This document shows, one piece after another, positions 17,931 to 50,647 of a DNA stretch of 64,000 nt. Position 1 is the stretch's first letter; each line of letters opens with the position of its first letter. The stretch lies in contig NW_003314418.1 in assembly GCF_000143415.4 (NCBI RefSeq), positions 1 through 64,000 on the forward strand, given 5' to 3'. Below the pieces are notes generated by a model that saw nothing but the letters and a program-made list of their open reading frames with translations, was not told where the DNA came from and ran no database searches. Source of the DNA: Selaginella moellendorffii (Eukaryota > Plantae > Lycopodiophyta). The translations under genes and the position numbers were made by a program.

Positions 17931-17974
17931 AGAAGCTAGCAAAGCATCCCACTAACAAAACTGCTAACTGTCTC

Positions 17975-19262
17975 ACGTGACACAACACCTCCAGCCATCA
18001 ACAGGGTCAGAAAAGAAAGAAAGGATAGGAGCAAGTGACTACTTCTCCTCTTCCTCTGGAATGTCATCCAAGTCATACTCAAAATTAGGAAACATCTTCC
18101 TCACATCATCCTCAGCTTCCCATGTAGCATCATATGGAGAATAACCATTCCACTGAACAAGTAACTCTGTCCAAGTCTTACGACGTGTGCACGCTAGCCG
18201 TTGCTATAACACACAAGTAGGGCCAACCTTCAAACATCTATCTCTGGAATCTTGATTGCAGACTGGTCCAAGATATTACCAGAATGCAAACACGCCTTCA
18301 ACTTCCCTACATAGAAGACGGGATGAATCTTCACACCACTAGGCAAGTCTAGTTGATAGGAAAGGTCTCCAACTTGTTTGAGAATAATCCAAGGCCCATA
18401 GTACTGTGGCGACAACTTAGAACTACCTCCACCTTGAAGAGCTCAGTGAGCTTCAGACAACCGAAGGAAAACCTTGTCTCCAAGCTGAAACTGCTTGTGC
18501 TGACAATGCTCATCAGCCAACTCCTTTGCCTAGTGCACCTTAAGAGAAGCCAAGTTCATACCAACAGGGGACCGAGGTTGAAAGCCATACATTGCCATAA
18601 ACAGAGCCATCTCAATAGCCAAATGGAAGGCACAGTTATGGGCAAACTCTAACAAAGGCAGGTACTTCTCCCAAATACCTTATCTCTTCAGATGACCAAC
18701 AAATGATCTCAGCATGTCTTCCAGCATCTAATTAACTCGTTTTTTTTGTCCATACTGTGGATGCTCATGCTCAGCTTTGTCTCAAGCTTCTAGAACACTG
18801 TCTACCAAAACTCCAAAGTGAATGTGGGATCCTGATCACTTACAACATCCTTAGGCAGCCCATAGAGAAATACAGCTGAGCAAGGTCAAAAGCCTTAGCA
18901 TTTGTCTTCACAAGGAAGAAGTGAGCCAACATCATCACACAATCCACAACAACTCAAATAGCATTATTGCCTTGAAGTGCCTACTATGAAACTCATAGAA
19001 AATGCTATCCCACTTCTGCTAAGGTTAACTATGGTAGAGACCTTCATGCTTTTGACAATCCATTGTGACTGCCTGGCCAGTTTAGCAACTGTGCACATAT
19101 TTATCAACACTTGACTTCATTCCAAGCCAAAATAAATGTGTCTCTACCAGAACACATATCCTTAGATGTCTTACATTTGGTGCAACGGACACTCTTACAG
19201 AATCCACTGTAAAAGAACATCATCTTTAGGAACCATAGCCCAATTCCTCTTGACTAGGAAAC
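17975..19262 (-). mobile_element. Chromovirus (Ty3/gypsy) integrase-chromodomain fragment
   Basis: LSPQYYGPW...SYQLDLPSGVKIHPVFYV (GPY/F region) followed by chromodomain-like ELLVQWNGYSPYDATWEAEDD (~18090-18170). Confidence 0.8.
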
Positions 19263-22066
19263 TGTTAGGTGCCAACTTTGACCACATAGTCAACATTGGT
19301 AAAAGGGAGGCTCAAGGGTATATTAAGGCATGTTAGGGTAAGGGACTTAATCTATTTTATAGTTCATAGTAGAGTTAGTGGAGCTTTTGAGGTAGCTCGG
19401 GGGTGGTTAGGTGGTGAGGAACCTCAAGAGGTGGCGTAGCATAGTTTAAGGTGACTAGATCTCTATCCTTTTGCGCCAGATTATAACATTGGTATCAGAG
19501 GGAGGTTGGTAGCGATGGCTGTCCAAACTGAACATTGGAATCCTATTGTCGATGGTGGTGCTAATGATGGTGCCGACGGAGCTGTGGAGATTTGGAACAT
19601 TTAGGATATGGTTTATGAGCTGCAATCCCTTAATTAAAATTAGCAAAAGATGCAAGATGAGATGCATGACATGATGGATATTATGTATGGGCAAGCTTGG
19701 ACACTACAAGGCTGATTGTCCATAGCTAAAGAATAAGCAGCAAAGCAAAAAGAATGGCCAATTTTTTATTGATGGTAAGTTAGATACTAAAAATTTGCAC
19801 ACTTTGTAGTATGAGGATGACGGGGATGACCATTCCGGTTGGAGGAAGAGGCTTTCAATTGTTGCTTGTCAACTCAACTGTGTGTGGAACAAGATGGAGT
19901 TCAAGGATACTTGTGAATCAACTTTAATGCTGGAGGGCATGTTCAGTGGTGGTCCAATACGAATTTTACTAGAGAGTGGGAGCAATGACAACTTTGTTTC
20001 AGCAACGTTTGTTGCAGAGTATGGCCTGGTCACACACAAAGTTCCTCTATACACAGTGGAAGGTGCAGTTACCTCTACTCAACATTTCGATGCTTGTGTA
20101 GAGGAGCTAGAAGTGTTGGTTGGCAAAACCACACTTCTAAAAACTTTTTATCTCGTGGATATCCATCATGTGGATCTCATTCTTGGGATGCCATGGTTGG
20201 TGAAGGTGGATCCGGAGATAAAGTGTAGTATTAAGAATGTCTCGTTGGAGTATAGCAACGTTAAATATGTGTGGTTTGGAGAGGGAGTTCAACCTCCAAT
20301 TGTTATGCTCTCCGCTATATCTTTGAAGGGGGCTTGTTGTAATGGAAAGGCACTTTTGAGTTACTTGCTGTTTGTTTATAACTTAGGAGACCAAGGCATG
20401 TGTGGGGGAGAAGTAGTAGTACAGGATGTACTCGACAAGTTTGCTGATGTTTTTCCACTTGAACTTCTTCATGGGTTGCCTCCATTACGAGATGTGGAGC
20501 ATGAGATTATGTTGGAGCCGGGGATATGGCCAATTTACCAGCATCTATTTCAGTTAAGTTATGTGGAGGAGCAAGAAGTTCAATAATAAGTCAAAAAGTT
20601 ACTTGAGTTTGGATTTATTCAGCCAAGTAAGTCTCTATTTGGTGCTCCAGTCTTGCTTGTGAAGAAGAAGGATGGTTCAATACGGATGTGTATTGACTAC
20701 TGTGTCTTGAACAAGAAGACGGTGAAGGATAAAATGCTAATGCCGCATGTGGATGATATCTTAGACAAGCTTGGTGAAGCAAAAGTGTGTACCAAGATTA
20801 ATATGAGGAGTGGATATCATGAGATTGCAATGGATGATGCATCTATCTCCAAGACGGCATTTAACACAAACTTCAAGCATTTTGAGTTTATAGTTATGCC
20901 GTTTAGTTTAACGAATGCACCAGCCATATTTACTCGGTTGATGACGGAGGTATTTGGGCGTTATTTTCATGAGTTTATGGAGATTTTCTTGGATGATATT
21001 CTTGTTTTCAGCAAGAATATGGAGGAGCATAAGGTGCATTTGCGCAAGGTTTTTTCGTTACTTCGTGATATCAAACTTTATGTGAAGAAGAGCAAATGTG
21101 AGTTTGCAAAGTCGGAGGTGGAATATCTAGGCCATATTGTGACATCTAAGGATGTCAAGATGGCTGTGGTGGAGAACTGGATTACACCAACTACAGTGGC
21201 TGAGTTATGTAGTTTCCTTAAAATAGCTAGTTACTACTGACGTTTCCAGCATAAGTTTGCGGAGGTGGCTATTCCTTTAACATGGTTGTTATGCAAGAAT
21301 GTGCTATTCGAGTGGAAGAAGCCACAAGAGGAGAGTTTTGTGGTGCTGAAACAATTATTGAGTGAGACTCCAGTGCTTCGCATTGCTGATGCATCAAAAC
21401 CTTACAAGGTGACATATGATGTGAGTGGTTATGCACTGGGAGGAGTTTTCATGCAAGAGGGACAACGTATTGCATATGAGAGTCAAACTTTGAATCTTGC
21501 AGAGCAATGTTATTCCACATATGAGCAAGAGTTACTCTCTATTGTTCATGCTTTGTGGACGTGGTGGCACTATCTTTATGGTGCAGTATTCATAGTGTTG
21601 ACAGATTGCAAACCACTTGTGTGTCTTTTCACACAAAAGGAGTTGAACACTAGACAACCTCGTTGGATAGTCAAACTCATGGAGTTTGGGGAGTTTAGTG
21701 ACGGGCCCAATGCCTCCTTAATGTATATGACTGTGGAAGATAGATTAGGAGCTTGAGCAAGGTTCCCTAGAAAGGGTGATCACTAGTACAACTTGTTTTT
21801 GGCAAAAGGACTTTGTTGGGGGGAAGAATTGTTAGGTGTTAACTTTGACCATATGATCAATGTCAGTCAAAGGCAGACTCAAAGGTATATTAAGGCATGT
21901 TAGGGTAAAGAATTTAACCTACCCTAGAGCTCACTGTGGAGCAGTGGTGCAAAAGAGCTTTTGAGGTAACTCAAGGGTGGTTGAGTGGTGAGGAACTTCA
22001 AAAGGAGGCCTAATCTAGTTTAGGAAGATTAGATTGTTGACTTTTTGTTTGTGCTGTGTCATAACA
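19263..22066 (+). mobile_element. Internally deleted Ty3/gypsy element (copy G1): 5' LTR 19263-19488, PBS 19490-19500, PR-RT-RH, PPT, 3' LTR 21830-22066
   Basis: TGTTA...TAACA LTRs; tRNA-iMet-type PBS tggtatcagag; protease LESGSNDNF; RT RMCIDY/FLDDIL; RNase H YDVSG; PPT ggggggaagaat. Most of gag and all of integrase are deleted. Flanks GAAAC vs CAATT do not form a TSD. Confidence 0.9.
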
Positions 22067-22436: not shown

Positions 22437-23810
22437 ATGGAAACACTGGTTGTCTACGTGCGGTGTGGGCATTTGGAGGAATCGAGAAGGATTTTTGATG
22501 CATTGCCAGCCAAGAACATTGTGTCGTGGACGGCGCTCGCGAGTGCGTATGCCGAGAGTGGGCATCCGGGTGAGGCCAAGGCAGCGTTCAATCGAATGGC
22601 GGTGCGGGATGTAGTTTCCTCCACTGCGATGGTCAAGGCGCTGGGCGATTGCGGGCGGATTGGATCGAGCAAGGCGGTGTTTGATGCGATGCCCGAGAGG
22701 AACAGCAAGACGTGGGCGATGCTGCTGCGGGGATTTGCTCGCAGCGGAGAGATTGGGTGAGCGAGAGAGGTGCTGAATTGGATGCCCGAGACGAATGTGG
22801 TAGCGTGGACGATCCTCGTGGCGCAGCGCGGGCGAGTGGGCGATGCGACGGCCGCGTTTGATTCCATGCCCGAGAAGAACAGCATCACTCGCGTGGTGAT
22901 GCTCGTCATGTTTGCGGAGAATGGATTCGTGGAGGAGGCGGAGGATGTCTTCCAGGAGATTGTCCACCGAAACGCGATCCTCTGGGGGGCGATGCACTGC
23001 TGCTATGCCCAAAATGGGGATTTGATTCAAGCCAAGAGTTTGTTTAATAGGATGCCTCTGCACAGCATGCTTTCGTGGACGCATATGATCAAGTCATACG
23101 CGCAAAAAGGTGACGCTGATCAAGGAAAACAATTGTTTGAAGAAATGCCACTCAGAGATCTTGTTTCATGGAACTCGATAATCGCTCTTTATGCCCAGAG
23201 AGGTCGTTTCAAAGACGCTATACGAGCGTTTTCTTTGTGTTGCTGCTGGGATTCCTATTCATGGAACACAATTCTCGTGGTATACGCTTTAGATGCAAAT
23301 AATTGTGAGGCAAAGAAGACGTTTGATAGAATACCAACTTGGAATTTGGTCTCCTGGAACACGATGCTAGCAGCATATGCCCAGACCGGCCATGCGTATT
23401 CTGCGATCCAGCTCTTTTGGGCGATGTTTCTTCACGGCTTTGATCCCGACAAGGCAGCGTTTGCCCTCGTTTTGACGGCGTGTAGCCATCTGGGGCTCGT
23501 CAAGGAAGCAGTAAGCTACTTCACGGCAATGAGCTTTGACAATGGATTGGGCCCTTCGCAAGACCACTACACCTGCATTGTTGATGCTCTAGGACGGCTA
23601 TGGCAATTGGAAGAGGCCGAGGATGTCCTGGAGAATATGCCTTTGCCAGCTGATGGAGTTGCATGGGCAACGTTTCTTACCGCGTGTAAAAACCACGGGG
23701 AGACGAATCGAGGGATGCATGCTGCGGAATTTACGTGCCAGTCCAGCCTTGTGAGTGATGCATTGCCTTATGTGATGCTGGAGAACATCTTCAGAGCAGT
23801 TCAGACTTGA
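22437..23810 (+). pseudogene. S/SS-motif-rich PLS-E class PPR gene with premature stop (copy 1)
   Basis: Tandem 31-aa S-type motifs, then P2-L2-S2-E (LTACSHLGLV...HYTCIVDALGR). TGA at 22758-22760 where the 59-kb copy has CGA; 9-bp deletion (QGF). Confidence 0.9.
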
Positions 23811-27886: not shown

Positions 27887-28511
27887 ATGGCATTGCTCTT
27901 CCCCAATTTCGTGATTTTTACAGACACCTCAGAGGATTGCTTGCTCTCCTGGGGAGCACTGCTCAAGAACTGCCGGGATCTGTCACAGGGGACGCAAATC
28001 CACGCCCGCATTGCGCAGAGCGAGCACCGCCGCAACAAATACCTCGCGAATCTGCTCGTCCAGATGTATGGCAAATGCGGCAGCGTCGATGACGCCCGTG
28101 CAATCTTCGAATCCATAGAGAATCATAAGCTCTTCTCCTCCAACATCATGATCCGGGCCTACGCACAGGCGAAAGATCTAAATCGAGCGCGCAGAACGTT
28201 CGATGGGATGCTCCGGCGAGATGCCTCGACGTGGAACTCGATCGTCACGGCATATGCCGACAACGGGGATCTTGATAAACCGCAAGAGGTTTTCGAATTG
28301 GCTCCAGAGAAGAACGAGATCTCTTGGAATGTGATGATCACGGTTTGCATCCGCAGTGGAAAGATAGCTTCTGCCAAGGATTTGTTTGATCGGATGCCCG
28401 TGAAGACGATCGTTGCGCAGACTGCCCTCGTCACAGCATTTGCCAGGAAAGGCCATTTGGATGAAGCCGAGGCTTCGTTTGAGAACATAGAGGAGCGCGA
28501 TGTAGAGTCAT
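27887..28511 (+). pseudogene. N-terminal fragment of a PLS PPR gene, fused in frame to the SEC16 fragment
   Basis: LLKNCRDLSQGTQIHARI...LANLLVQMYGKCGSVDDAR... and S motifs end at ERDVESW, where SEC16 sequence begins. Confidence 0.85.
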
Positions 28512-31054
28512 GGGCTTTTGGCTCTCGCTGTCTACAGACAACTCCAACCGAACAGCAAATGCAGGCTGGGCAGTCTTTTTCTCTTGAGTTGATACAAACG
28601 AAGACTTTCTGGCGACAGGCAACTGCATTTGAGGTGAAAAGGCTACTGATTGCCGGAAAGCAGAAAGAGGCTTTACGGGCTGCTCAAGACGGGCAACTTT
28701 GGGGATGTGCTCTTCTTATGGCCCGGCAGCTGGGAGAGAAGGTACCTTGTCTTGGAGCTTTGATGTATAGACCGTTAGTGATGGTCTTGTGGTTTTTAAT
28801 AGTTCTACACCGACACTATAGCGGAGATGGCTCAACGTCAGTTTCAACCAGGGTTTCCCCTCCGAACTCTAACTCTTCTTTATGCTGGTCAACATGCCGG
28901 AGTGTTCGTAGGGAACACTAATTCGTCGAACGTAACAGCGCTTCAACCTCAACCGGTTCCAGCGTCCGCTGTAGATGGTGCAACACAGGTGAAATACTTT
29001 TATCAAGCTACTCTCTTGCTTTAAGGAGTGCATGTTGACTTGCAGGACGCAGTAGAAGGAATGCTTGAAGAATGGCAGGAAAACCTGGCTATAATGGCAG
29101 CTAACCGAACTAATGGGGACGAGAGAGTGATTATGCATCTTGGTGATTGTCTCTGGAGACATCGAGATGAGGTATATACATGGTCACACGTTGATGTTTC
29201 TCATAGTTTTAACTTGCAGATATGTGGAGCCCATATTTGCTATCTTGTTGCAAATGCTAGTTTTGAGCCTTTCTCCCCTTCTGCCAGACTTTGTCTTATA
29301 GGTGCCGACCATTGTAAGTATCCACGCACGTACGCTAGTCCAGAAGCTATCCAGGTAAGCCGTGTTTGTCCTCAATAACAATTGTTAACCTTTTCTTCAT
29401 CAGCGAATGGAAGTGTACGAATTTGCAAGAGTGACCGGCAATTCCCAGTTTATTTTACTTCCTTTTCAGCCATACAAGCTTATTTATGCGTCGATGCTTG
29501 CTGAAGCTGGAAAGATAAACGAAGCTTTAAGGTTGGTAGTGATTTTTAACTGTATCCTTAAGGTTTCTCTTCAAAGGTATTGCCAAGCGGTGTTGAAAAC
29601 ATTGAAAACAGTGGGCCATGCAGCTGATGTGTGCAAAGAAGCGGCTGTACCCTTGGAAGAGCGTCTTTGTATTCACTCTCAGGTTTGTAATCGGACACAC
29701 GGCTTTTATACTCACTTTCCTGTTATCCAGGGAGGCTCGACGTCAATTGTGCAACAGTTTTTTGGCAATATTGGTCTACACAAGATGACAGGCCCTTCTT
29801 CCCCGAAAGCTTCTGATATGCTGATATTAATAACTGTCCCGCAACAGCTTCTAGCAGAAGCAGTGTATCACTTGCCTTGTCGGCATCAATAGAACCCATA
29901 AGTGATAATACGAGAAGATCCAACATGCCAGCGAGAAGCATTTCTGAGCCTGAGTTTAGGCCTGCACAGGTAACTCGACTTGCTCTTGTGTACCTTCGAT
30001 TAAGACTTGTATTCTTTCATCAGATCGTTAGTCCAGCGAAAGGAATGCCAAACAGAGGCGTCTTTACTTCTTTCGTGCAAAGAGCGATGGGCTTCATAAA
30101 AACACCTTCGAAGGAGGTTTGTAGAAGCTTTGGAAAGAGCGCTAGCTGATTGATGGTCGGTATGTGATGCAGGCAAAGCTTGGCGACAGCAACAAGTTTA
30201 GATACGACGAGACACTGAAGCGCTGGCTTGAAGAACGAGCCAAGGCACAAGCGCCAGAGCTTCCGTTGGCTCCTCCTCCCACGGCAAACAAGCTCGTCTC
30301 ACGCGTGGAGGAGAACGGCGCTCTTATTTCCATGTCTCCGGAGAGACCACCGCCAACTTCGGAAAGGCCGCAACCGGTTGTGAGTGGAATCCCACCAATG
30401 CCTCCGAGCAGTAACCAGTACGCAGCTCGCGCACGTCAAAACGTTAGATCAAGGTACCGTTTTGGTCATTCGCAGCACTCCAATCTCACGAGGTTTTTGC
30501 AGATATGTCGATACATTCAACAAAGGTAGCGTAACACCATCCAAGACATCATCGGACTCTCCTCCACTGTTTGGCGTGGTGCCAAAGGCAAGCGCAAAGC
30601 CTTTGGCTCCAGCGAGATTTTTCGTGCCTGCGGCCGCTGCTGCCGCTGCTCCAGATATCAACAGCAACCATTCGGTGGATCCTTCCTCGGCACCGGCCTT
30701 TGTCCCCGACACGGCATTCTCAAACGGGAATGGACCGTTTGCACCAGCAGCATTCGCTCAGCCGGTTGTACAGGATATGAGAAACGATCCGGGGCCAACG
30801 CCTGATCATCTATCGAGCGGCTCTTCGCCAGCAATGTTCTATTCGAATCACTATCCAGCAGCACCGTCGACCGTCTCGTTGCCGCCACCTGCAGCTCTGG
30901 AAGTTACTCCGCCAGTGATGGTCGAGCAGCAGCAGCAAAACCAACACCAGGAAAGTTCGATTCATCGGCACCTCAACAGTCCGGCACAGTGGGATTCGAA
31001 GCTGCCAGTTTCTTCGGAGTGTTTGGAGACGACTTGCAAGAGGTGGAATTGTAA
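28512..31054 (+). pseudogene. SEC16: SEC16/MAG5-like COPII scaffold gene, 3' portion, multi-exon (copy 1)
   Basis: Spliced motifs EQQMQ|ATAFEVKRLLIAGKQKEAL...LWGCAL, GFPLRTL, WQENLAIMAANRT, LGDCLW, AHICYLVA, EVYEFA, PYKLIYA, AKLGDSNKFRYDETLKRW, RSRYVDTFN, terminal DDLQEVEL*. Introns of ~45-60 nt; 4-bp deletion at ~30971. Confidence 0.9.
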
Positions 31055-39049: not shown

Positions 39050-40605
39050 CCTTTGACTATCTCATTTTGAAGCTTTGGAATGCTCAAGGAGTTTTTTCTA
39101 ACTCAGCAAAGATGTTGCTTCATATGCCAAGGCTAACTATTATCAAATAGTTCTTTTGATAGAGTTATGCAATCTCATGTGTGAGACACTACTTTGATGA
39201 TGTCCTATGACTAAGGAGGAACATGAGATGCATGTGAGGCAAAAGTTGCCACTATTGAGGGAGAACAAGCTGTATTCTAAACTGTCAAAGCGTGAGTTCT
39301 TCTTAGAGGAGATCGCCTATCTCAGACATGTGGTGCCATGAGATGGTGTGCAGGAAGATCCTCAAAAGACTCAAATAGTCATTGACAGTGGATTCTGTAA
39401 GAGTGTCCATTGCACCAAGTGCAGGACATCGAGGACATGTGTTCTGGTAGAGACACATTTATTTTGGCTTGGAATGAAGTCAAGTGTTGATAAGTATGTG
39501 CACAATTGCTAGACCGGCCAGGCAGTCACAATGGATTGTCAGAAGCATGAAGGTCTCTACCATAGTTAACCTCAGCGGAAGTAGGATAGCATTTTCTACG
39601 AGTTTCATAGTAGATGCTTCAAGGCAATGATGCTATCTGGGTTATTGTGGATTGTGTGATGATGTTGACTCACTTCTTCCTTGTGAAGACGAATGCTAAG
39701 GCTTTTGACCTTGCTCAGCTGTATTTCTCTATAGGCTGCCTAAGGATGTTGTAAGTGATCGAGATCCCACATTCACTTTGGTGTTTTGGCAAACGGTGTT
39801 CCAAAAGCTTGAGACAAAGCTGAGCATGAGCATCCACAGTCAGATGGACAAACAAAACGAGTTAATTAGGTGCTGGAAGACATGCTGAGATTGTTTGTTG
39901 GTCATCTGAAGAGGCAAGGTATTTGGGAGAAGTACCTGCCTTTGTTAGAGTTTGCTCATAACTGTGCCTTCCATTTGGCTATTGAGATGGCTCTGTTTAT
40001 GGCAATGTATGGCTTTCAACCTCGGTCCCCTGTTGGTATGAACTTGGCTTCTCTTAAGGTGCACCAGGCAAAAGAGTTGGCTGATGAGCATTGTCAGCAC
40101 AAGCAGTTTCAGGTTGGAGACAAGGTTTTCCTTCAGTTGTCTGAAGCTGAGACAACAAGGTAGTTCTAAGTTGTCGCCACAGTACTGTGGGCCTTGGATT
40201 TTTCTCAAACGAGTTGGAGACCTTGCCTATCAACTAGACTTGCCTAGTGGTGTGAAGATTCATCCCGTCTTCTATGTAGGGAGTTGAAGGCATGTTTGCA
40301 TTCTGGTAATATCTTGGACCAGTCTGCCATCAAGATTCCAGAAATAGATGTTTGAAGGTTGGCCCTACTTGTGTGTTATAGCAACGGCTAGCGCGCACAC
40401 ATCGTAAGACTTGGAGAGAGTTACTTGTTCAGTGGAATGGTTATTCTCCATATGATGCTACATGGGAAGCTGAGGATGATGTTGTTTCCTAATTTTGAGT
40501 ATGACTTGGATGACATTCCAGAGGAAGAGGAGAAGTAGTCGCTTGCTCCTATCCTTTCTTTCTTTTCTGACCCCGTTGATGGCTGGAGGTGTTGTGTCAC
40601 GTGAG
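39050..40605 (+). mobile_element. Chromovirus pol fragment (RT remnant, integrase, chromodomain); inverted partner of 17975-19210
   Basis: VLEDMLRLFV...WEKYLPLLEFAHN, LSPQYCGPW, IHPVFYV, ELLVQWNGYSPYDATWEAEDD. Confidence 0.8.
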
Positions 40606-40649
40606 ACAGTTAGTGGGTTTGTTAGCGGATGCTTTGCTAGCTTCTCTCT

Positions 40650-42220
40650 CCTCAGCTACTGTTCATCATAGTTGGAGCAGAGGGAAAAATGTCACCGTAT
40701 TTCGTGATGAACCAGCTGATTCTGGACCTAGGTCTCTAATCAAAGAGCCAAATACAACTGCAAATTTGCATCTGAAGGGGTGTTCAAGCATCTCCACGGG
40801 GTTTTCATTGCATAGAATACACAGAGTTTTGTGAACTGTGAGCCAATCACCAACAGGGATGCTGTCCTGCACAAGAAGCCAGCTTACCTTAGCTTCCACC
40901 AGTGTCTTCCACATGTTCACAATGTACTTCCGATTCTTCAACTTCCGCATAAGCCTGGTGTCAATTTTATCCATCAAAAGCTCTCTGCCATGCTTAAACC
41001 TGTACATAAAAAAAGACACACTGAACTCATTACCTTCCCAGGATAACTGAGCCGGATCCTATATAAGATCAGATTTAGGTACTCCCCAAACTAGTGTATT
41101 GCAGAGCATTCTCCCAGTTGAACCTTAGGATCCAGTTCAGTGTATTTCCCTCTCTGATGTATCGTCCTGATCCTTTTACTGAAGGCCATCCTGGGAACTG
41201 GGACCTCCTTGGGAACTATACATGGAAACAGTGCACCACTGTTATGGGGATAAGAAACAATACCTTGAGGTGATGGGGTTGTTTCCATAACAAAGATGAT
41301 TTGAGTCAAGCATTATCCAATCACGAACCTCGATAACTTCAGTTTGTAAAGCAAGATGAAGGCGATCACAAGCGATGCTGCCTTAAGCTTTGATGTGGAG
41401 TTTTCATCCTGGGTTGTAATGGGTTGTCATGAGGCCATGGGTTTGCTCCAAGCGGACGTTAAACAAATACCTGACTTTACCTTTTTCATTGTATCATACC
41501 TTTTCCACTGCTGAGGAAGAAAAACAAGATCCCAACAAGAACTTTGCTGCAAGTGATGGCTTGCTAGCTCTTTGTAGATCCAATAAGTCTTTGATCGAAG
41601 CTCCCACATTTCTATGCCACCTAGGCCAAAGACCTCTACCCAAGCCTGGAGCTGAACAGTCACCTATATACTGTTGATTACTGTTCTTATGCGCTACGTT
41701 GAAGAACAAGCGATCATCTAATGCCTCTGTCAGATGGTCTGGTTCTTTCTGACTTAACCTGGGTAGGAGTGTGACTTCCATATCTTCAACATCTCTTTTG
41801 CTATTCCATCCTGGACCTTCTTTGTGTTGAGAGGAGCAGTGCCAATCGATTCCTTGTTTCTAGTTACCACCCTGTCTAGGCAAGATCTTCAGTTTCGTGG
41901 ATATAAACCTGACACAAGAACTTTGAAGAGAAGAGCTTGGATTGAATTCCTGGGTGTGGCACATTCTGAATAACTGAATTCCACTCTACTTTTGCCCGGA
42001 CTTTGCACCCGCTGGAGTTTCTAAAGTTTCTACATATGTCGTTGGAGATCAAGTGTTGGTGAGTTATCGGGTGTTGCAGATCCAAGGTTTTTGCTGCGTA
42101 GGTCCTTATCACATCGTCCAACAAGTTGGTCCACAAATCTATGTGGTGACACTCAATGCACAACGTCAAGAGAAGATCCATGTGAAGCGGTTAGCTCTAT
42201 ATTGTGTGCAAACGGATTGA
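40650..42220 (-). mobile_element. LINE ORF2 relic, duplicate of 16330-17930
   Basis: ORF 40666-41019 carries CILCNENPVEMLEHPFRCKFA (zf-RVT-like). Confidence 0.6.
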
Positions 42221-44514
42221 TGTAAGGATTCTACCATATATTCTATGGTAAATATAGATAAACTCAACAAGATTGGAATACACTAGCTTTTTAATAATAA
42301 TAAATTAACAATTTTTAATGTGTATTTATGGAGCCCACAAGAGTAGGAGTGAGGAGTTATCATATTATGAATCCCACAAGATCAAGAGTGAGAGGTGTTT
42401 AATCACATTTTTTATATGCTCCATATGATCCTGACGTCTAGGGATATGAGGGGGGCCCAGGAAAGCTAGAGGAAGGGAAAAAAAGAATTAATTAGAGTGA
42501 AAATGCGAGTTATTGTGAAATTAGAGTATAAATGTGACGAGCTAAGAGTAGCAGCTTAAAAGAGGGAAGTAGGAATGCTCGGATGGAGTCCACCAGGTAG
42601 AAAAGACAAGTCATACCTCAAGCCTCGGATTGCTCCCAACCCCCTGCCTCCACCCGGTTGCCTACTTTAACCAAGCCCCGGACCACCCAGCAGTCTTGGC
42701 GCACAGGGATGACATCAGCCCTAACCTCTTGCTCACTTCTGAGCTTCTCCCCCCTTAAGAAAAAAGGTCTGTTGTTCTCTTGGAGTTCAAGAGGCATCCT
42801 CTTCACCGTCTCCTCTGTTTTTGCTAGCTAGTTAGCTCTTACAAGAAGGAGCACAAGCCAAGTTCAGCTCCATGCTCAGCTCTATCATCTCCTCTTTAAG
42901 ACACCTCACCTCTTTGAGGCCATTCAGAAGAGCTAGCACGCTTCACCTCTAGACGTCCCCCCCCCCCCTTTTTTGCAATTGTCTCTTCAAACTCATCATA
43001 CTTATTTAACTCACCAAACCTTACCAAGCCGAGTGCAGGTTTTGAAACCCCATGAGTCACCTTGGCCAACAATCTTGACGTGCGGATGCGTCCAAACTGC
43101 TGGACCATTTCTCCAGGAGATAACTTATGCTACAACACTCTCCGCTCGACGATCTCAATGTGGAAAGATCCACAAAGCTGTCCCACTCATCATAGTTGTA
43201 GAAGAAATCATCCTCATACTGCATCTGCAACCTTGCTCGAGCCCAAGCCTCCGCCATCACAAGCTTCTCCCTCATCTTGATCAGCTCACACTTGAGGCGG
43301 CAAAACAAGTCCAGGTCCTGAGGAACAACAATGGAATACACCTTTCCCGGGTACCTGTCTCGAAACCTGTGAAAGTACAGTGGACGATGTGGTGTTTCAG
43401 ATCGCAGCGGAATGATAACTTAATGAAAGCAACAAAACCATCGAGCTCGCTCTTTGGGGATCAATTATCATCTCCTCCTTTGAAGCAATGAGCAGCAGGC
43501 CTTGATCGCATCCAGAAGTACTAGTCAGAGATAGTCTGCAAAAGCAAGTTTGACACCAGTTATTTTGGCAACACAGAAGAAAAAGAAGAAAAATAAACTC
43601 AATTTTCAAAATTTATAGAGATCCATACAACCCAAATCAAGATCAATCTTCCACGAACTTAATGCCGCTTTCAGCACCTCCAAGCTCTGCCGAAAAACGT
43701 AGCCACGGTATGCCACAATCGTTCGCTTGAAAATCTGAAGATGTCAATCGAAGCATGCAAGAAAAAATGGACAACAAAGGAGATGAACTGAGCGAGGCCA
43801 AGAACACATATAAGGACTGAATGGAAGCACATGAGGCCTCACGCGGTTTTTTCCTCCATGTGTGGCTTCATGTGCGAAGAGTTTGGTGTGGTAATGTATG
43901 TTGCGGAGCAGCCAGAAGCCCAGGGTGAATATAAGTACGTGAGGCCTTCTGAGGTTTTACCACCGCCCGAGGACTCCTATGCATGGGCCCCAGGCGAGAG
44001 TCATTTGCGAAAGTGTTCTGCATGAAACTGGTGCCCTGAGGTTTCTGGCCGTGTCGCCCCATGAAGAGGATTTTTTATTTAATTTGTGTAGAGTGTGGTT
44101 TATTTTTGCATATTGAGTGTATCAATATCTTTTAGTTAGCAGATTATATTGAAGAACTGAAGACTACCTACAGTTAAGTGCATGCAGCAACAGATTATAT
44201 AAAAAATGAATGCAGAGAATAACAAATCGGGATTTCTAGGAAGTTCGTGCGTGTTGTTAGTAATAATAATAATAATCATAAAAACCTGATGTTCAGCTAG
44301 TTAGAAGATTGTCTGAAAATTATGCATGTACTGATTCTTCAGCTCTTGAGCAACTGATTGCTGCTGGCTCACTTTCTATATATATCAAAGAGACAATAAA
44401 CATCTAAGCTGCTGTAGTTAAGCTGTGACATTGTAAAGTTTAAAAAGGAAAAGAATTAGAAAAAGAAAAAACAGAAAACACAGTTAAGTACTAACAAATC
44501 GGGATTTCTAGGGT

Positions 44515-47500
44515 ATGCGTGCGGCGCTAGGGTTTGTGTGGTGTGTGTCATTTCTCAAAACTCTCATGGAGTGGAAAACGTTTTTCAGGGATCCCACTTT
44601 CTGGTGGGACAACAGGTTCAAGAAGAAAAACAAGTTCTTCTCAGAGTCCTACCCGGATTTCAAACATGTTTCTACCGGAGAGAGCCTGTGGATCGCCAAC
44701 AGGAAAACACCAACCTGGGTCTCTGCAAAACTCGAGTCGCTCGCTGACCCAGCTGTAGGTAAGGCCACCACGGCCCGCTACAAATCTCCACATACCCCAC
44801 CTGTAGCTGGTGATGAACCGGTGAGTTTAGGGAGGCTGATACACCGCGTGAGACACTCAGCTGAGAGCAGATCCCTTTCTTTGGGAAAACAAGCCCATGA
44901 AGCTGTGCTCAAGAGTGATGAGCACAAAAGCAACATCTACTTGTTGACGGGATTGATCGATATGTACTGCAAGTGTGGCGAGCTTGAGGAGGCTCGCAAG
45001 ATTTTCGACTCCATGGGAACCCGGAGTGTTGTGTCCTACAACGCGATCATCCAGGGCTGTGGCTCGAACGGGCAAGCTGAACTCGCTCTGGAGTACTACT
45101 CTGCCCTGAGAGTTGATAACACCATTCAACCCGACGATCGGACTCATGTCGCGGTGATCAGCGCCTGCTCCAGACTTGCTACCGAATCCAGCGAGAAGAG
45201 GGAGAGAGCTCTACGCATCGGGATGGAGATCCATTCAATGCTGAGCAAGGAGAAGAAACAGGTAGATCTGTTCGTGGCGACTTGCCTGGTAGACATGTAC
45301 TGCAAGTGTGGCGAGCTTGAGGAGGCTTGCAAGATTTTCCACTCCATGGGAACTCGGAGTGTTGTCTCCTACAATGCGATCATCCACGGCTGCGGCTCGA
45401 ACGGGCAAGCTGAACTTGCTCTGGAGTACTACTCTGCCCTGAGAGCTGATAACACCATTCAACCTGACGATCGGACTCATGTCGCGGTGATCAGCGCCTG
45501 CTCCACACTTGCTACCGAATCCAGCGAGAAGAGGAAGAGAGCTCTACGCATCGGGATGCAAGTCCATTCAGTACTGAGCAAGGAGAAGAAACATCTAGGT
45601 CTGTTCGTGGCGAATTGCCTGGTAGACATGTACTGCAAGTGTGGTGAGCTTGAGGAGGCTCGCAAGATTTTCCACTCCATGGGAACTCGGAGTGTTGTGT
45701 CCTACACCGCGATCATCCAGGGCTGCAACACGAACAGGCGAGCTGAACTTGCTCTGGAGTACTACTCTGCCCTGAGAGTTGATAACACCATTCAACCCGA
45801 CGATCGGACTCATGTCGCTGTGATCAGCGCCTGCTCCAGACTTGCTACCGAATCCAGCGAGAAGAGGGAGAGAGCTCTATGCATCGGGATGGAGATCCAT
45901 TCAATGCTGAGCAAGGAGAAGAAACAGGTAGATCTGTTCGTGGCGACTTGCCTGGTAGACATGTACTGCAAGTGTGGCGAGCTTGAGGAGGCTCGCAAGA
46001 TTTTCCACTCCATGGGAACTCGGAGTGTTGTCTCCTACAATGCGATCATCCACGGCTGCAACACGAACGGGCAAGCTGAACTTGCTCTGGAGTACTACTC
46101 TGCCCTGAGAGCTTGTACCACCATTCAACCCAACGATCGGACTCATGTCGCTGTGATCAGCGCCTGCTCCAGACTTGCTACCGAATCCAGCGAGAAGAGG
46201 GAGAGAGCTCTACGCATCGGGATGGAGATCCATTCAATGCTGAGCAAGGAGAAGAAACAGGTAGATCTGTTCGTGGCGAATTACCTGGTAGACATGTACT
46301 GCAAGTGTGGCGAGCTTGAGGAGGCTCGCAAGATTTTCCACTCCATGGGAACTCGGAGTGTTGTGTCCTACACCGCGATCATCCAGGGCTGCAACACGAA
46401 CGGGCGAGCTGAACTTGCTCTGGAGTACTACTCTGCCCTGAGAGTTGATAACACCATTCAACCCGACGATCGGACTCATGTCGCGGTGATCAGCGCCTGC
46501 TCCAGACTTGCTACCGAATCCAGCGAGAAGAGGGAGAGAGCTCTACGCATCGGGATGGAGATCCATTCAATGCTGAGCAAGGAGAAGAAACAGGTAGATC
46601 TGTTCGTGGTGACTTGCCTGGTAGACATGTACTGCAAGTGTGGCGAGCTTGAGGAGGCTCGCAAGATTTTCCACTCCATGGGAACTCGGAGTGTTGTGTC
46701 CTACACCGCGATCATCCAGGGCTGCAACACGAACGGGCGAGCTGAACTTGCTCTGGAGTACTACTCTGCCCTGAGAGTTGATAACACCATTCAACCCGAC
46801 GATCAGACTCATGTCGCGGTGATCAGCGCCTGCTCCACACTTGCTACCGAATCCAGTGAGAAGAGGGAGAGAGCTCTACGCATCGGGATGGAGATCCATT
46901 CAATGCTGAGCAAGGAGAAGAAACAGCTAGATCTGTTTGTGGCGAATTGCCTGGTAGACATGTACTGCAAATGTGGCGAGCTTGAGGAGGCTCGCAAGAT
47001 TTTCCACTCCATGGGAACTCGGAGTGTTGTCTCCTACAATGCGATCATCCAGGGCTGCAACACGAACGGGCGAGCTGAACTTGCTCTGGAGTACTACTCT
47101 GCCCTGAGAGCTGATAACACCATTCAAGCTGATGCTTGGACCTACACCTGCGTCCTTGTTGCTTGCGGGAGTGTGATGGCGATCAAGCTCGGGAGGGAGA
47201 TTCACCAGCTGGTGAAGCATAAAGGGCTGCTGAAAAACAATCCAGTTCTGGGCTCCAGCCTGGTGAGCTTCTACGGCAAATGCGGTGATGTTGATTCTGC
47301 TCAGGAAGCGTTTGACGAGTGCCGAGCTCGGGACGACACGGGTCTCTGGAACTCTCTCATACAGGCTTACACTCTCCAGGGCCGATCGATCGAGGCCTTG
47401 GAGCGTTTCTATTCCATGACTCAGGAGGAGGGCTGTAAAGCTGACGATGTGAGTTTTGTTTCGGTGTTGAACGCTTGCAGCCATGGTGGTCTGGTCGGGA

Positions 47501-48192
47501 AAGGAAGGCAGCTTCTGGATGAAATGCCCAAGCAGTATGGAGTCAAGCCACGTCTGGAGCATTATGTGTGCCTGATCGATATGCTCGGGCGAGCTAACCT
47601 CCTCGACGAAGCTGTGAGAGTTCTCAGAGCCATGCCTTTTGAACCGGATGCAGTGGTTTGGACGTCCCTGCTCGGAGCCTGCCGGAAGTGGAAGAATTAC
47701 ACGATCGGCAAACTCGCGTTTGAGCGTCTTGTGGAGATGGATCCCAAGAGCGGCACGCCCTACGCATTGATGGCCAATATATTTGGAAACCTGGGGATGC
47801 TCAGTGAAAGGGCCGCTGTTGTGGAGAGAATGAGAGGTGAAGGCAGCTTCAGGGAGCCCGGGAGAAGCTGGTGGACGGATGTTTGCTCAGGAAAAGTGCA
47901 TTCTTTTTCTGTCGAGGATAGGAGTCACTCACAGAGTGACGAGATTGCGGCCAAGCTCAAGCAATTGTTGCTGAGAATGAAAGAGGAGGGGTATGCGAGC
48001 GATGTGATCAACGTTCTAAAAGACATACCCGAGGAAGAGAAAGAGGATCACCTGTGCGGCCACAGTGAGAAGCTTGCGCTGGGGTGTGCTCTGGTGAACT
48101 CGCACCAGAAGGAGACCATCAGAATTGTGAAAAATCTCCGAGTTTGTGACGATTGCCATGCGGCCACTTCTCTAAGCTGGAAAAAAGGCTAA
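44515..48192 (+). CDS. 1225-aa intronless PLS-class PPR protein with N-terminal OSB-type PDF motif and E1-E2-DYW deaminase (C-terminal tail frameshifted; ancestral stop 48261-48263)
   Basis: PDF motif aa20-76 (WKTFFRDPTFWWDNR...YPDFKHVSTGESLWI...TPTWV); ~6.6 x 111-aa S-P-L triplets; P2-L2-S2-E1-E2; PG box EPGRSWW; HSEKLA (48061); CDDCH (48145-48159). A 7-bp deletion after 48168 truncates the tail. Confidence 0.92.
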   Translation: MRAALGFVWCVSFLKTLMEWKTFFRDPTFWWDNRFKKKNKFFSESYPDFKHVSTGESLWIANRKTPTWVSAKLESLADPAVGKATTARYKSPHTPPVAGDEPVSLGRLIHRVRHSAESRSLSLGKQAHEAVLKSDEHKSNIYLLTGLIDMYCKCGELEEARKIFDSMGTRSVVSYNAIIQGCGSNGQAELALEYYSALRVDNTIQPDDRTHVAVISACSRLATESSEKRERALRIGMEIHSMLSKEKKQVDLFVATCLVDMYCKCGELEEACKIFHSMGTRSVVSYNAIIHGCGSNGQAELALEYYSALRADNTIQPDDRTHVAVISACSTLATESSEKRKRALRIGMQVHSVLSKEKKHLGLFVANCLVDMYCKCGELEEARKIFHSMGTRSVVSYTAIIQGCNTNRRAELALEYYSALRVDNTIQPDDRTHVAVISACSRLATESSEKRERALCIGMEIHSMLSKEKKQVDLFVATCLVDMYCKCGELEEARKIFHSMGTRSVVSYNAIIHGCNTNGQAELALEYYSALRACTTIQPNDRTHVAVISACSRLATESSEKRERALRIGMEIHSMLSKEKKQVDLFVANYLVDMYCKCGELEEARKIFHSMGTRSVVSYTAIIQGCNTNGRAELALEYYSALRVDNTIQPDDRTHVAVISACSRLATESSEKRERALRIGMEIHSMLSKEKKQVDLFVVTCLVDMYCKCGELEEARKIFHSMGTRSVVSYTAIIQGCNTNGRAELALEYYSALRVDNTIQPDDQTHVAVISACSTLATESSEKRERALRIGMEIHSMLSKEKKQLDLFVANCLVDMYCKCGELEEARKIFHSMGTRSVVSYNAIIQGCNTNGRAELALEYYSALRADNTIQADAWTYTCVLVACGSVMAIKLGREIHQLVKHKGLLKNNPVLGSSLVSFYGKCGDVDSAQEAFDECRARDDTGLWNSLIQAYTLQGRSIEALERFYSMTQEEGCKADDVSFVSVLNACSHGGLVGKGRQLLDEMPKQYGVKPRLEHYVCLIDMLGRANLLDEAVRVLRAMPFEPDAVVWTSLLGACRKWKNYTIGKLAFERLVEMDPKSGTPYALMANIFGNLGMLSERAAVVERMRGEGSFREPGRSWWTDVCSGKVHSFSVEDRSHSQSDEIAAKLKQLLLRMKEEGYASDVINVLKDIPEEEKEDHLCGHSEKLALGCALVNSHQKETIRIVKNLRVCDDCHAATSLSWKKG
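44935..47130 (+). repeat. Tandem array of 333-bp near-identical units (PLS triplets)
   Basis: Unit starts at 44935, 45268, 45601, 45934, 46267, 46600 and 46933. Confidence 0.97.
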
Positions 48193-49579
48193 TCATCTGC
48201 AAAGATGCCAGTCGGGTTCATGTGTTCCAGGATGGCGGATGTTCCTGTGACAACTACTTTTGAAAACATGTCAGTGCTTTTTCTTGCAATTATCCCTGGT
48301 TTTAAACCCTCTGTGAGTCAAGCAGAAACATGGGCCGCTGAGTGAGCAAAGTACCACCGTCAACCTGAACTTCACGGAGAAAAAATTAACATTTAAAAGT
48401 TAAAACTATGCAAAAGGAGGATGACACGTTACTTAAATTTAAATTTCTTTTTGGTAGCAGAATCCAGGAATGCTGACTAAACCTGCCAACAGGTGCCCCA
48501 AAACGGAGTGCCTAGATTCAGATAATAAGCCTTAGTATGAAGACTTGCCGGTACCCAAACTCTTTGCTGATAGCAAGTACCGCCTCATGTTCCAGGAGCA
48601 AGGTGATGGTGGCTTGCGGCATGACCAACTTTGGGTTTTTGCTCCTAGAGCACGTTGAAGACGTGTGGAAGCTGGTGACGACGGCATTTGTTTCTTGCAA
48701 TGTACTCACCAGCTCCTCGGCGATGTCTTCCTTCCAGATTTTTTGAGCTTGTTGTGAGTGGTGACCTGCTTGCTCTCTCCTGTGACGACTTCTTCCAGCC
48801 TCTGGTGCCCAGGCTTTCTTGTGGATGGAGCTAGCCCTACACAGTGTGTGTGTGTATCAACCAGCAGATGCACAAATCGTTGAGAATTAGCAACAAGTGA
48901 CGTAGTGTACTAGTGTACATGTACATGTGTTTCAGCTAAATATAATGGGCCAAATACACCGAAGAAGTGTGTATAAGAAGAGTAGAAACAAATTAAGAAA
49001 TGTAAATTAAGAAGTGCAAAAGAAATGAAAATAAAGATTGTCCATCCTCATCAGTTTGCTGAAATTAAGTTGGATTCAATTCTTCCAGCTCCAAATATTG
49101 TGTGATTGTAGTTTTTTATTTTCGAAAGAAAATTAGTGGGGGAGTGCTGGTAAAGATATCTTTGCCGTTCATTGGTGGTTAATTAAATGAGCATGTTTAG
49201 AGATGTTTATCTGGACCAAGAGTTACCGGAAAATTAAAGTTCAAAATTTACGTTTTCCCTATTTGCACAATAACTTAAGCTAAAGTAATGTACTTACCCT
49301 TATTTTTTATGGGAAAATTATTAGTATTTTGGATTCGCACGAAAACAAAAGGGAGGATTCTTAAGTAATTTTCAAAAACCCCGACCAAATCTAAAGTGTT
49401 GGGGGGGTCATTTTATTTTAAGGGAAGTTGTTAAAAATTATTCCGGAAATATTCGAGAAGATTCTTAAGTTAGGGTTTGGCGTGCCTGCGAAGAAGTTCT
49501 GATCTCGCGGCACGGCCCGAGAATTAAAACATGGCAGCAGCCGCGGAGATTTATGAGGAGAGGAAGAAGCAGGTAATCC

Positions 49580-50647
49580 GATTTTAGGGTTGGAAGAGGA
49601 AACAGAGCTCTGGGAAATGGGGCCGATCGAGCTGGATCTGGGCCTGCTCGTGCTCTATCTTCACCAACAGGAGGAGGAAGAGGTGCCCATGGAGGGAGAG
49701 GTGGCCATGGAGTGGGAGGAGGGCGCGGGGTGGCCGGGGTTGGCCGCGGATCTCTGAATCTGGCCCCGGGAGGATTAGGCCATGGTTCTGAGGCGGCTCG
49801 AGGAGGGGGTGCCCCGGGAGGAGGAGGCCATGGTTCTACTCTAGGAGGAGGACGCCGCGGTTCTTCTCCGGGAGGAGGAGGCCATGGATCATCGCCAGGA
49901 GGAGGCCAAGCCTCGGTGGGAGGAGCCGAAGCCACAGCGGGAGGAGTCCAAGCCGCGCCCGGAGGAGCCCAAGCCACGTCCGGAGGAGTCGATCCAATTC
50001 GCAACATCAACAGGTACTTGACGTCTGGTGCTGGAACCGACTGGCTCCCTCCGGAGTGCGATATCTCCATCAGGCCCGGTTGGTTTTGGCACAGGAACGA
50101 GGCTCCAAAATCCCTGGAGCAGCTGCTCGACGTTTTCTACAAATCATCTGCCAGGAACTGCTTGCTCCTGCTCAACGTCCCTCCAAACTCGTCGGGACTG
50201 ATCGACAAATCCGACTTCCAGACGCTGGAGCGGTTTAGCTCCGCCATAGATTCCATCTTCAGCGTCAACTTAGCAGCGAATCCCTTGTCCGTGACAGCAA
50301 GCAGCGTTCGCAGCTCTTCGTTCGGGCCGAAGCAAATCCTTGACGAGTGTATGGAAACTTTCTGGGCTCCAATGCAAGGGGAGTCGACCGGCTGGATCGA
50401 GCTTGATCTTGGCAAGGTCTCAAAGTTCAACGCACTGGAGATCCGAGAGCCAGTAAACATGGGACAAAGGGTCATGGAATATCACGTCGAGGCATGGGAC
50501 AGCGAGCTGGGCTGGTACCTGGTGAGCAACGGTAGCACCATTGGTTACAGGAAAGTGGATCGACTGGAAGAGGATCAAGTATGCACTGCTCGGCTCGTTC
50601 GACTGCTGATTGATGCTTCTTTGGTTTGTACTTCGATGTGCGTATGA
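49580..50647 (+). pseudogene. Chimeric ORF: glycine-rich segment fused in frame to fucosidase exon 3
   Basis: GGGHGS-type repeats (49670-49988) join fucosidase intron-2 tail and exon 3 (gatccaattcgcaacatcaacag|GTAC...). Truncated at ~50638 by an inverted PPR fragment. No in-frame ATG upstream of the Gly-rich part. Confidence 0.7.

What the first reader, a model, noticed from the sequence alone, without database searches (positions are those of the whole stretch)
44515..48263. PDF (OSB ssDNA-binding) motif fused to a PLS-PPR array and DYW cytidine deaminase
Seen: one intronless ORF joins WKTFFRDPTFWWDNR...YPDFKHVSTGESLWI...PTWV (44572-44742) to PLS repeats, E1/E2 and a DYW domain with intact HSE and CxxC zinc ligands. 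The same fusion is present in the paralog at 11685-14070, so it predates the duplication. Established: this W-x-x-FF-x-x-P-x-x-WWDNR...PDFKH...LW pattern is the PDF motif of organellar single-stranded DNA-binding (OSB) proteins, and PLS-DYW proteins are C-to-U organellar RNA editors. I know of no characterised protein combining the two. Inference: the PDF motif could tether the editor to nucleoid ssDNA or R-loops for co-transcriptional editing, act as an extra RNA-binding module, or point a sequence-programmed deaminase at ssDNA (a natural base-editor-like design).
Basis: partly seen in the sequence, partly recalled or inferred. Interest (0 to 1): 0.9.

Follow-up and report, generated by a model that had tools for sequence, protein, structure and literature searches.

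The report
Damaged PPR-DYW editor with PDF motif
This spikemoss (Selaginella moellendorffii) gene for an organelle RNA-editing-type enzyme really does begin with the small single-stranded-DNA-binding "PDF" module of plant OSB proteins, a combination I found in no paper, but this copy has lost the end of its deaminase through a 7-base deletion and its neighbouring twin is a wreck.

Summary
ORF 44515-48192 (+, 1225 aa, no intron) joins a complete PDF motif (aa 18-77) to S-P-L PPR triplets, E1/E2/E+ and a DYW deaminase.

- **PDF homology:** it matches named OSB proteins at E about 1e-16 in a 1.8-billion-protein library, with 45-46% identity to both PDF motifs of poplar OSB1. All invariant PDF residues are kept.
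- **Not an OSB:** there is no OB fold. It is a PLS-DYW editing-factor-type protein with an added N-terminal PDF.
- **Distribution:** the same architecture occurs in other Selaginella genes, in Diphasiastrum and in Adiantum. It also occurs in three ESM-Atlas PPR/DYW clusters of 57-127 members.
- **Literature:** no paper in the library describes it.
- **This copy is damaged:** a 7-bp deletion after 48168 shifts the frame and removes three of the four ligands of the structural zinc. Transcript-like contigs from four studies carry only the undeleted form.
- **Intact relatives:** near-identical ORFs exist elsewhere in the assembly (L001, 1029 aa; L003, 1009 aa).
- **Paralog:** the copy at 11685-14070 (-) is a multiply broken pseudogene.
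- **Targeting:** the PDF sits at the extreme N-terminus, with no conserved transit peptide.
- **Function:** what the PDF does is untested.

The scan has already noted this architecture about 26 times on other DNA of this genome.

The parts
44515..48192 (+). Intronless ORF of 1225 aa (copy A): PDF, linker, PPR array, E1/E2/E+ and a truncated DYW domain
   Evidence: An in-frame TAG lies 6 nt upstream of the ATG (alignment).
44566..44745 (+). PDF motif (aa 18-77) with all invariant and near-invariant PDF residues
   Evidence: AF2 model of aa 16-82 has pLDDT 90.6.
44746..44850 (+). Pro/Ala/Thr-rich linker between the PDF and the first PPR repeat
   Evidence: Read from the translation. pLDDT drops at the end of the PDF model.
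44962..47127 (+). Tandem array of 333-bp (111-aa S-P-L triplet) units, 6.5 copies at 95% identity. There are seven MYCKCG units here against five in the intact relatives.
47695..47979 (+). E1/E2 (Pfam E_motif) and E+ motifs
47989..48171 (+). N-terminal two thirds of the DYW deaminase domain: PG box, HSE (48061-48069) and CDDC (48145-48156)
48168..48169 (+). Site of a 7-bp deletion (GCTCTCA) between short CTCT direct repeats, which shifts the frame
   Evidence: against copy B; against L001; contigs of 3 runs carry the 7 bp.
48171..48263 (+). Out-of-frame remnant of the DYW tail (S-K-L-E-K-R...H...C-S-C-D-N-Y-F, then stop). It holds three of the four ligands of the structural zinc.
   Evidence: Ligand positions are from PMC7611903.
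11685..14070 (-). Copy B: a pseudogene of the same PDF-PPR-DYW gene, with the PDF split over two frames
40577..49114 (.). One arm of an inverted segmental duplication, about 94% identical to 10841-18000, that carries the two copies

Best explanation
The locus is a recently disabled member of a small, very young S. moellendorffii subfamily of PLS-class PPR-E-DYW proteins. These are the organellar C-to-U RNA-editing-factor type, and their N-terminus is a genuine OSB-type PDF module.

In intact members (L001, L003) I infer the following. The PPR tract reads the RNA upstream of the target cytidine and the C-terminal DYW domain deaminates it. The PDF acts as a sequence-unspecific clamp on single-stranded nucleic acid at the 5' end of the bound stretch. 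That would raise affinity or tether the factor to transcribing nucleoids.

In this copy a slippage-type 7-bp deletion removes the last 32 residues of the DYW domain, including three of the four structural-zinc ligands. The encoded protein is therefore most likely catalytically dead, and the copy is not detectably expressed.

Shown here: the architecture, the homology, the lesion, the intact relatives and the wider distribution. Inferred: the editing function, the role of the PDF, and the loss of function.
For: - **PDF homology:** E 1.8e-16 and 5.3e-16 to proteins named OSB1 (Populus) and OSB3 (Anthurium), which carry an SSB-like OB fold. Identity is 45-46% over the whole motif. All four invariant and all ten near-invariant columns of 100 PDF motifs are kept. 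The fold is confident (pLDDT 90.6) and superposes on Atlas models of OSB-type SSB proteins (TM 0.86) and of three PPR/DYW clusters (TM 0.76-0.84, rmsd 1.5-1.9).
- **PPR-DYW identity:**
- **Lesion:**. The Zn2 ligands H924, H947, C954 and C956 are described in PMC7611903.
- **Intact relatives:** a 1029-aa ORF in L001 and a 1009-aa ORF in L003, both with a full DYW domain. Copy A differs from L001 at only 4 of 1053 nt in the unique C-terminal part.
- **Expression:** contigs of 4 runs from 4 studies cover about 44500-48400 without joints. All that cross 48168 carry the 7 bp. No indexed run holds the deletion-junction words.
- **Selection:** dN/dS is about 0.25 against L002, from 15 changes.
Against: - No biochemical or genetic data exist for any PDF-PPR protein.
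- The 7-bp deletion rests on one assembly and could not be checked in DNA reads.
- The runs are only guessed to be RNA, and contigs drop rare variants.
- There is no conserved transit peptide. The 18-aa leader is absent from L003, and the PDF starts at residues 4-9 in P0092 and P0086. Organellar location is therefore not assured.
- Nearly identical repeated S-P-L triplets are odd for a site-specific editing factor.
- L002 keeps a long ORF with half of its PDF out of frame, which hints that the PDF may be dispensable.
Confidence: 0.7

Rival explanations
1. The gene in this window is actually intact. The 7-bp gap would be an assembly or consensus error, or a rare allele, and copy A would be a working PDF-PPR-DYW gene like L001.
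For: There is only one lesion in 3.7 kb. Copy A is 99.6% identical to intact L001 in the unique C-terminal part. No public run holds the junction words, and every contig crossing the site has the 7 bp.
Against: The deletion lies between CTCT direct repeats 7 bp apart, which is typical of real replication slippage. The contigs also differ from the window at other diagnostic sites, such as 44559, 44561 and 48237. They therefore come from a sister copy and say nothing about this one. The listed runs are probably RNA, so an unexpressed copy would be invisible.
Confidence: 0.15
2. The truncated protein still works as an E+-like specificity factor, with a C-terminally truncated DYW domain that recruits a deaminase in trans, as angiosperm E+ PPRs do with DYW1/DYW2.
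For: The ORF is open for 1225 aa, with the PDF, PPR, E1/E2 and the catalytic HSE/CxxC retained. PMC7611903 mentions E+ proteins with truncated DYW domains acting with trans DYW proteins.
Against: The truncation is very recent (4 differences from the intact copy). The out-of-frame tail is still fully recognisable. No expression of the deleted form was seen. Trans-acting DYW partners are not known in lycophytes; that last point is from my own knowledge.
Confidence: 0.07
3. The PDF on these PPR proteins is a functionless relic of an exon-shuffling or retroposition accident, or is not translated, and contributes nothing to the protein's action.
For: L002 keeps a 1027-aa ORF although the first half of its PDF is out of frame. 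Copy B lost WDNR. PDF trees are unresolved.
Against: All 14 invariant or near-invariant PDF positions are kept in copy A, L001 and L003. The motif is retained at the N-terminus of diverged PPR proteins of Selaginella (54% identity), Diphasiastrum and Adiantum, and in Atlas PPR/DYW clusters of 57-127 members. A relic would not be conserved like this. Contigs run continuously from about 44495-44541 through the PDF into the PPR repeats.
Confidence: 0.08

Closest known systems
OSB proteins (Arabidopsis OSB1-4 and orthologues; Zaegel et al. 2006 as summarised in PMC6963530, PMC4166229 and PMC13393729)
   Same: Both carry the roughly 50-60-aa PDF motif with the same conserved residues (W..F..P..WWDNR..K..PDFKH..TGE.LW...P.WV). 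Identity to poplar OSB1 PDFs is 45-46%. In OSB1 the motif is reported to be sufficient for ssDNA binding.
   Different: This protein has no SSB-like OB fold and no transit-peptide-like N-terminus. Its PDF is N-terminal and single, whereas in OSBs it lies C-terminal to an OB fold. The rest of the protein is a PPR-E-DYW protein.
PLS-class PPR-DYW C-to-U RNA editing factors (for example Physcomitrium PPR56/PPR65; the Arabidopsis OTP86 DYW structure, PMC7611903)
   Same: S-P-L PPR triplets, E1/E2, PG box, HxE and CxxC zinc site. In intact relatives the tail has the His and Cys-x-Cys ligands of the structural zinc.
   Different: It has an extra N-terminal PDF module and no evident presequence. The PPR tract is made of near-identical tandem 111-aa units. 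The terminus reads NYF instead of DYW. This copy lacks the last 32 residues in frame.
Other accessory-domain fusions of editing factors (RRM-PPR, MORF-PPR and RanBP2-Znf-PPR fusions catalogued in PMC13386178)
   Same: A PPR protein has acquired an additional nucleic-acid-binding or partner module.
   Different: That kingdom-wide survey mentions neither OSB nor PDF. The added module here is known as an ssDNA binder, not as an RNA-binding or editing-accessory domain.

Membership tests
OSB (organellar ssDNA-binding) proteins | One or more PDF motifs | tested here: met
OSB (organellar ssDNA-binding) proteins | Central SSB-like OB-fold domain | tested here: not met
   Pfam finds no SSB domain in the 1225-aa ORF. 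Named OSBs P0061 and P0066 do hit PF00436.
OSB (organellar ssDNA-binding) proteins | N-terminal organellar transit peptide | tested here: inconclusive
   Only 17 residues precede the PDF. They are absent from L003, and an in-frame stop lies 6 nt upstream. No targeting predictor was available.
PLS-class PPR-DYW RNA editing factors | PLS-type PPR repeat tract | tested here: met
   PPR, PPR_1 and PPR_2, 16-17 stretches; S 31 aa / P about 35 aa / long L units.
PLS-class PPR-DYW RNA editing factors | E1/E2 motifs | tested here: met
   E_motif 36.4 bits (cut-off 27.3). E+ is weak at 20.6 bits (cut-off 24).
PLS-class PPR-DYW RNA editing factors | DYW deaminase catalytic signature HxE(x)nCxxC and PG box | tested here: met
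   EPGRSWW, HSE at 48061-48069, CDDC at 48145-48156.
PLS-class PPR-DYW RNA editing factors | Complete C-terminal DYW motif with the structural-zinc ligands (His and Cys-x-Cys) | tested here: not met
   In this copy they are out of frame after 48168. The feature is met in relatives L001 and L003.
PLS-class PPR-DYW RNA editing factors | Organellar location and C-to-U editing of a defined site | not testable with these tools
   No localisation or activity data. No conserved presequence.

The most novel reading that the evidence does not exclude
PDF-bearing PPR-DYW proteins of lycophytes and ferns are not ordinary RNA editors. Lacking a presequence and carrying an ssDNA-binding head, they would act on or at single-stranded DNA. 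Two versions are conceivable: obligatorily co-transcriptional editing on the displaced strand or R-loop of organellar nucleoids, or sequence-guided cytidine deamination of ssDNA, which would be a natural base-editor-like enzyme.
Probability: 0.08. Interest if true: 0.85.

Novelty: new variant of a known kind. Interest (0 to 1): 0.5.

Why it matters
PPR-DYW proteins are the catalysts of plant organellar C-to-U editing and the chassis of programmable RNA editors. Selaginella has the most extreme editing known, yet it lacks the MORF-type helpers of seed plants.

A conserved and apparently undescribed N-terminal ssDNA-binding module on many of its editors suggests one of two things. It could be an alternative helper principle, in the form of a built-in clamp on single-stranded nucleic acid. 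Or it could be a physical link between transcription or the nucleoid and editing. Either idea is directly testable with recombinant protein.

The finding also widens the known range of the PDF motif beyond OSB proteins. This particular copy adds a picture of how fast the family turns over, through repeat-number change, segmental duplication and decay.

Tried and rejected
- **Word-indexed homology search:** the PDF region searched within the full-length ORF found nothing. With the 497-aa RefSeq model it found only close paralogs. The tool is too insensitive for a 60-aa motif, so no census of PDF-PPR genes was possible. Only the best 150 of 473 exhaustive hits could be inspected, and 5 of those representative clusters are PPR proteins.
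- **Sequence-based family and structure searches:** Pfam has no model for the PDF. The PDB sequence search gave nothing meaningful.
- **Fold searches:** Foldseek against PDB gave no hit with E<=0.001. VIA-align gave a best Z of 2.7. BFVD gave nothing. No solved analogue of the PDF fold was found, which does not prove that the fold is new.
- **ESM-Atlas feature search:** blank.
- **Tree of 100 PDF motifs:** unresolved. PPR-linked PDFs cluster more than shuffled labels (5 changes against 7.8), but a single origin is neither shown nor excluded.
- **Founding OSB paper:** Zaegel et al. 2006 is not held, so I could not check whether it mentions PDF motifs outside OSBs.
- **Junction word search:** the first try was too short.
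- **Upstream-exon idea:** the 32 unlike letters before 44541 in two runs match nothing in the window or the fetched loci, so a spliced upstream exon got no support.
- **Allele idea:** L001 as the simple allele of this window was rejected, because colinearity ends after about 10 kb.
- **Not done:** no complex prediction was run, and no binding claim is made.
Full report
**Observation**

The window carries one uninterrupted ATG ORF at 44515-48192 on the + strand, 1225 aa long. Pfam finds about 17 PPR stretches, an E motif at aa 1061-1119, E+ at 1128-1155 and DYW_deaminase at 1159-1219. It finds nothing in the first 112 residues. HSE (48061-48069) and CDDC (48145-48156) are present.

The ORF stops at 48192, and the DYW tail (through the His, the C-S-C and a terminal N-Y-F) is read in another frame at 48171-48263. 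Pfam accordingly matches only positions 1-61 of the 93-position DYW model.

**Is the N-terminal motif a PDF motif?**

Yes. An exhaustive phmmer search of aa 1-112 against 1.84 billion representative proteins gave 473 hits at E<=1e-3 and 126 at E<=1e-10.

- Two of the hits are named by their sources. One is 'protein OSB1, mitochondrial-like' of Populus (E 1.8e-16, two PDF stretches). The other is 'Protein OSB3, chloroplastic/mitochondrial' of Anthurium (E 5.3e-16, three stretches). Both carry the SSB-like OB fold upstream of their PDFs.
- BLASTP gives 45-46% identity over the whole 60-residue motif to each of the two poplar PDFs, and 39-43% to the three Anthurium PDFs.
- In an alignment of 100 PDF motifs, the four invariant columns (W, D, F, W) and the ten near-invariant columns are all kept by the window's sequence.
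- With that alignment, AlphaFold2 gives a confident small alpha/beta domain (pLDDT 90.6, pTM 0.75).
- The model has no convincing counterpart among solved structures. Foldseek gave nothing at E<=0.001, the best VIA-align Z was 2.7, and there was no PDB sequence hit.
- In the ESM Atlas it superposes at TM 0.86 on an SSB/OSB-type cluster. It also superposes at TM 0.76-0.84 (rmsd 1.5-1.9 Å over about 61 residues) on three streptophyte PPR/DYW clusters of 127, 57 and 63 members.

**What the protein is**

It is not an OSB, because the OB fold is absent. It is a PLS-class PPR-E-DYW protein, the architecture of organellar C-to-U editing factors, with a PDF added at the extreme N-terminus.

The PPR tract is unusual. 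It is a 333-bp tandem array (6.5 copies at 95% identity, 44962-47127), that is, seven near-identical 111-aa S-P-L units.

**This copy and its relatives**

The organism is Selaginella moellendorffii. The best hit is RefSeq XP_024536012.1 (97% identity over aa 1-112), on scaffold GL377592.1.

- **L001:** an intact, intronless 1029-aa ORF with a PDF, five units, E motifs and a complete DYW domain.
- **L003 (GL377722.1):** an intact 1009-aa ORF that starts directly at M-E-W-K. The upstream ATG is out of frame there.
- **L002:** a 1027-aa ORF in which the first half of the PDF is out of frame.
- **RefSeq models:** the models of 471-566 aa splice the repeats out. I saw no joint that would support such introns.

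Copy A differs from L001 at only 4 of 1053 nt in the unique C-terminal part. It lacks 7 bp (GCTCTCA) after 48168, which are present in copy B and in L001. The deletion lies between CTCT direct repeats, as replication slippage would produce.

According to the OTP86 DYW structure, the structural zinc is held by H924, H947, C954 and C956 (PMC7611903). The frameshift removes the equivalents of the last three.

Copy B (11685-14070, - strand) lies in the other arm of an inverted segmental duplication (40577-49114 against 18000-10841, about 94% identity). It is dead. It has a 9-bp deletion of WDNR, 5-bp and 8-bp frameshifting deletions, a +1 insertion in the DYW domain, a 158-bp inversion and fewer repeat units.

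Both local copies have since decayed independently.

**Expression**

Contigs from four runs in four studies lie on about 44495/44541 to 48400, with no joints and nothing upstream of about 44495. The runs are guessed to be RNA: their totals are small, adapters are present, and there is no upstream coverage. The PDF-coding part is therefore contiguous with the PPR repeats in these molecules.

However, the contigs carry the sister copy's diagnostic letters (44559 A>C, 44561 C>A, 48237 G>A). Every contig that crosses 48168 has the 7 bp. They match L001 at most of these sites but not all. No indexed run holds the words that span the deletion junction; every holder has 4 of 7 words.

An intact family member is thus apparently expressed. 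This copy was not detected. Its deletion could not be verified in DNA reads.

**Distribution and literature**

Among the 150 listed representatives, five clusters are PPR proteins:

- the present family;
- another Selaginella PLS protein (P0092, 910 aa, PDF at residues 6-65, 54% identity);
- Diphasiastrum complanatum KAJ7568880 (PDF at 146-204);
- Adiantum capillus-veneris KAI5061374 (two N-terminal PDFs);
- a transcript contig from run SRR4210093 (three PDFs followed by PPR repeats).

In all of them the PDF is N-terminal to the PPR tract.

Full-text searches found no paper that combines 'PDF motif' with DYW or PPR. A 2026 survey of OSB evolution never mentions PPR. A 2026 kingdom-wide survey of editing-factor domain fusions never mentions OSB or PDF. 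The founding OSB paper was not available.

The scan's own notebook lists about 26 notes of the same architecture elsewhere in this genome. I treated these as leads. I independently confirmed the homology, the lycophyte and fern distribution, and the absence of literature.

**Mechanism**

What is shown: the architecture, the homology, conservation of the PDF residues, and weak purifying selection on the PPR-DYW part (dN/dS about 0.25 from 15 changes).

What is inferred: in intact members the PPR tract binds RNA 5' of the target cytidine and the DYW domain deaminates it. The PDF is reported for OSB1 to be sufficient for ssDNA binding, with a preference for ssDNA over dsDNA and RNA. Here it would add sequence-unspecific affinity for single-stranded nucleic acid at the 5' side of the site, or tether the factor to transcribing nucleoids.

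An open point concerns targeting. In the Selaginella and Adiantum proteins the PDF starts within the first 4-20 residues. The short leader is not conserved, and the first 40 residues contain 5-6 acidic residues (P0092, P0086, P0182). Named OSBs instead have Ser/Thr/Arg-rich, acid-poor presequence-like N-termini.

Nothing here tests the ssDNA-deaminase idea. I give it a low probability.

**Verdict**

It is old and widespread in lycophytes and ferns. This locus itself is a freshly broken copy next to a dead twin. I classify it as a new variant of a known kind, of moderate interest.

Noticed in passing
window 44962-47127; L001, L002, L003 arrays: The 111-aa S-P-L units form a mosaic that differs between paralogs in number (7 in copy A, 5 in each of L001-L003, about 3 in copy B) and in order. 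Position 5 of the P motif, a PPR code position, is N in 11 and T in 11 of 22 units. The pattern suggests unequal crossing-over or gene conversion that shuffles specificity residues.
   Followed up: partly
ESM Atlas fold search with the PDF model: After the plant OSB and PPR clusters, the next matches are phage (Uroviricota) hypothetical-protein clusters at TM 0.61-0.67 (rmsd 1.2-2.5 Å over 46-56 residues). One phage cluster carries Rad52/Rad22 (TM 0.50). This is a weak lead that the PDF fold may have phage ssDNA-protein relatives. BFVD gave nothing.
   Followed up: partly
P0036 (Coptis chinensis KAF9616283.1, 1526 aa): Three PDF motifs (residues 190-395) are followed by a kinesin motor domain (458-765). 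This is either a real fusion or a merged gene model.
   Followed up: no
P0002, P0003, P0004 (743-1160 aa): These proteins have 9-13 tandem PDF motifs, far more than the 1-5 reported for OSBs in PMC13393729. Their sources are not named.
   Followed up: no
L002:3001-6084 (GL377592.1:1221801-1224884): This paralog keeps a 1027-aa ORF and a full DYW domain, although the first half of its PDF is read out of frame through compensating indels. It may be a natural 'PDF-less' variant, or the start of decay.
   Followed up: partly
window 44541 (runs X4, X9): Contigs continue upstream of 44541 with 32 letters (ending in a TA-repeat) that match nothing in the window or in L001-L003. They may come from another paralog's 5' region or from a chimeric contig.
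   Followed up: partly
L001:10001-13090 and RefSeq XP_024536012.1 / XP_024536032.1 / XP_024522904.1 and relatives: The RefSeq models of this family (471-566 aa) remove the repeat array as introns, although the loci are continuous 1009-1029-aa ORFs. No spliced joint was seen in the contigs.
   Followed up: partly
window 11911-12068: A 158-bp segment of the E2/DYW region of copy B is inverted relative to copy A.
   Followed up: no
window 19882-20583 (+); 22770-23807 (+); 27887-28918 (+); 49712-50644 (+): Between and beside the two copies lie four other ORFs: a retroviral-type aspartyl protease fragment (a retrotransposon remnant), two further PPR ORFs (one with a Sec16-like piece), and an ORF with F5/8 type C and alpha-L-fucosidase fragments.
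   Followed up: no
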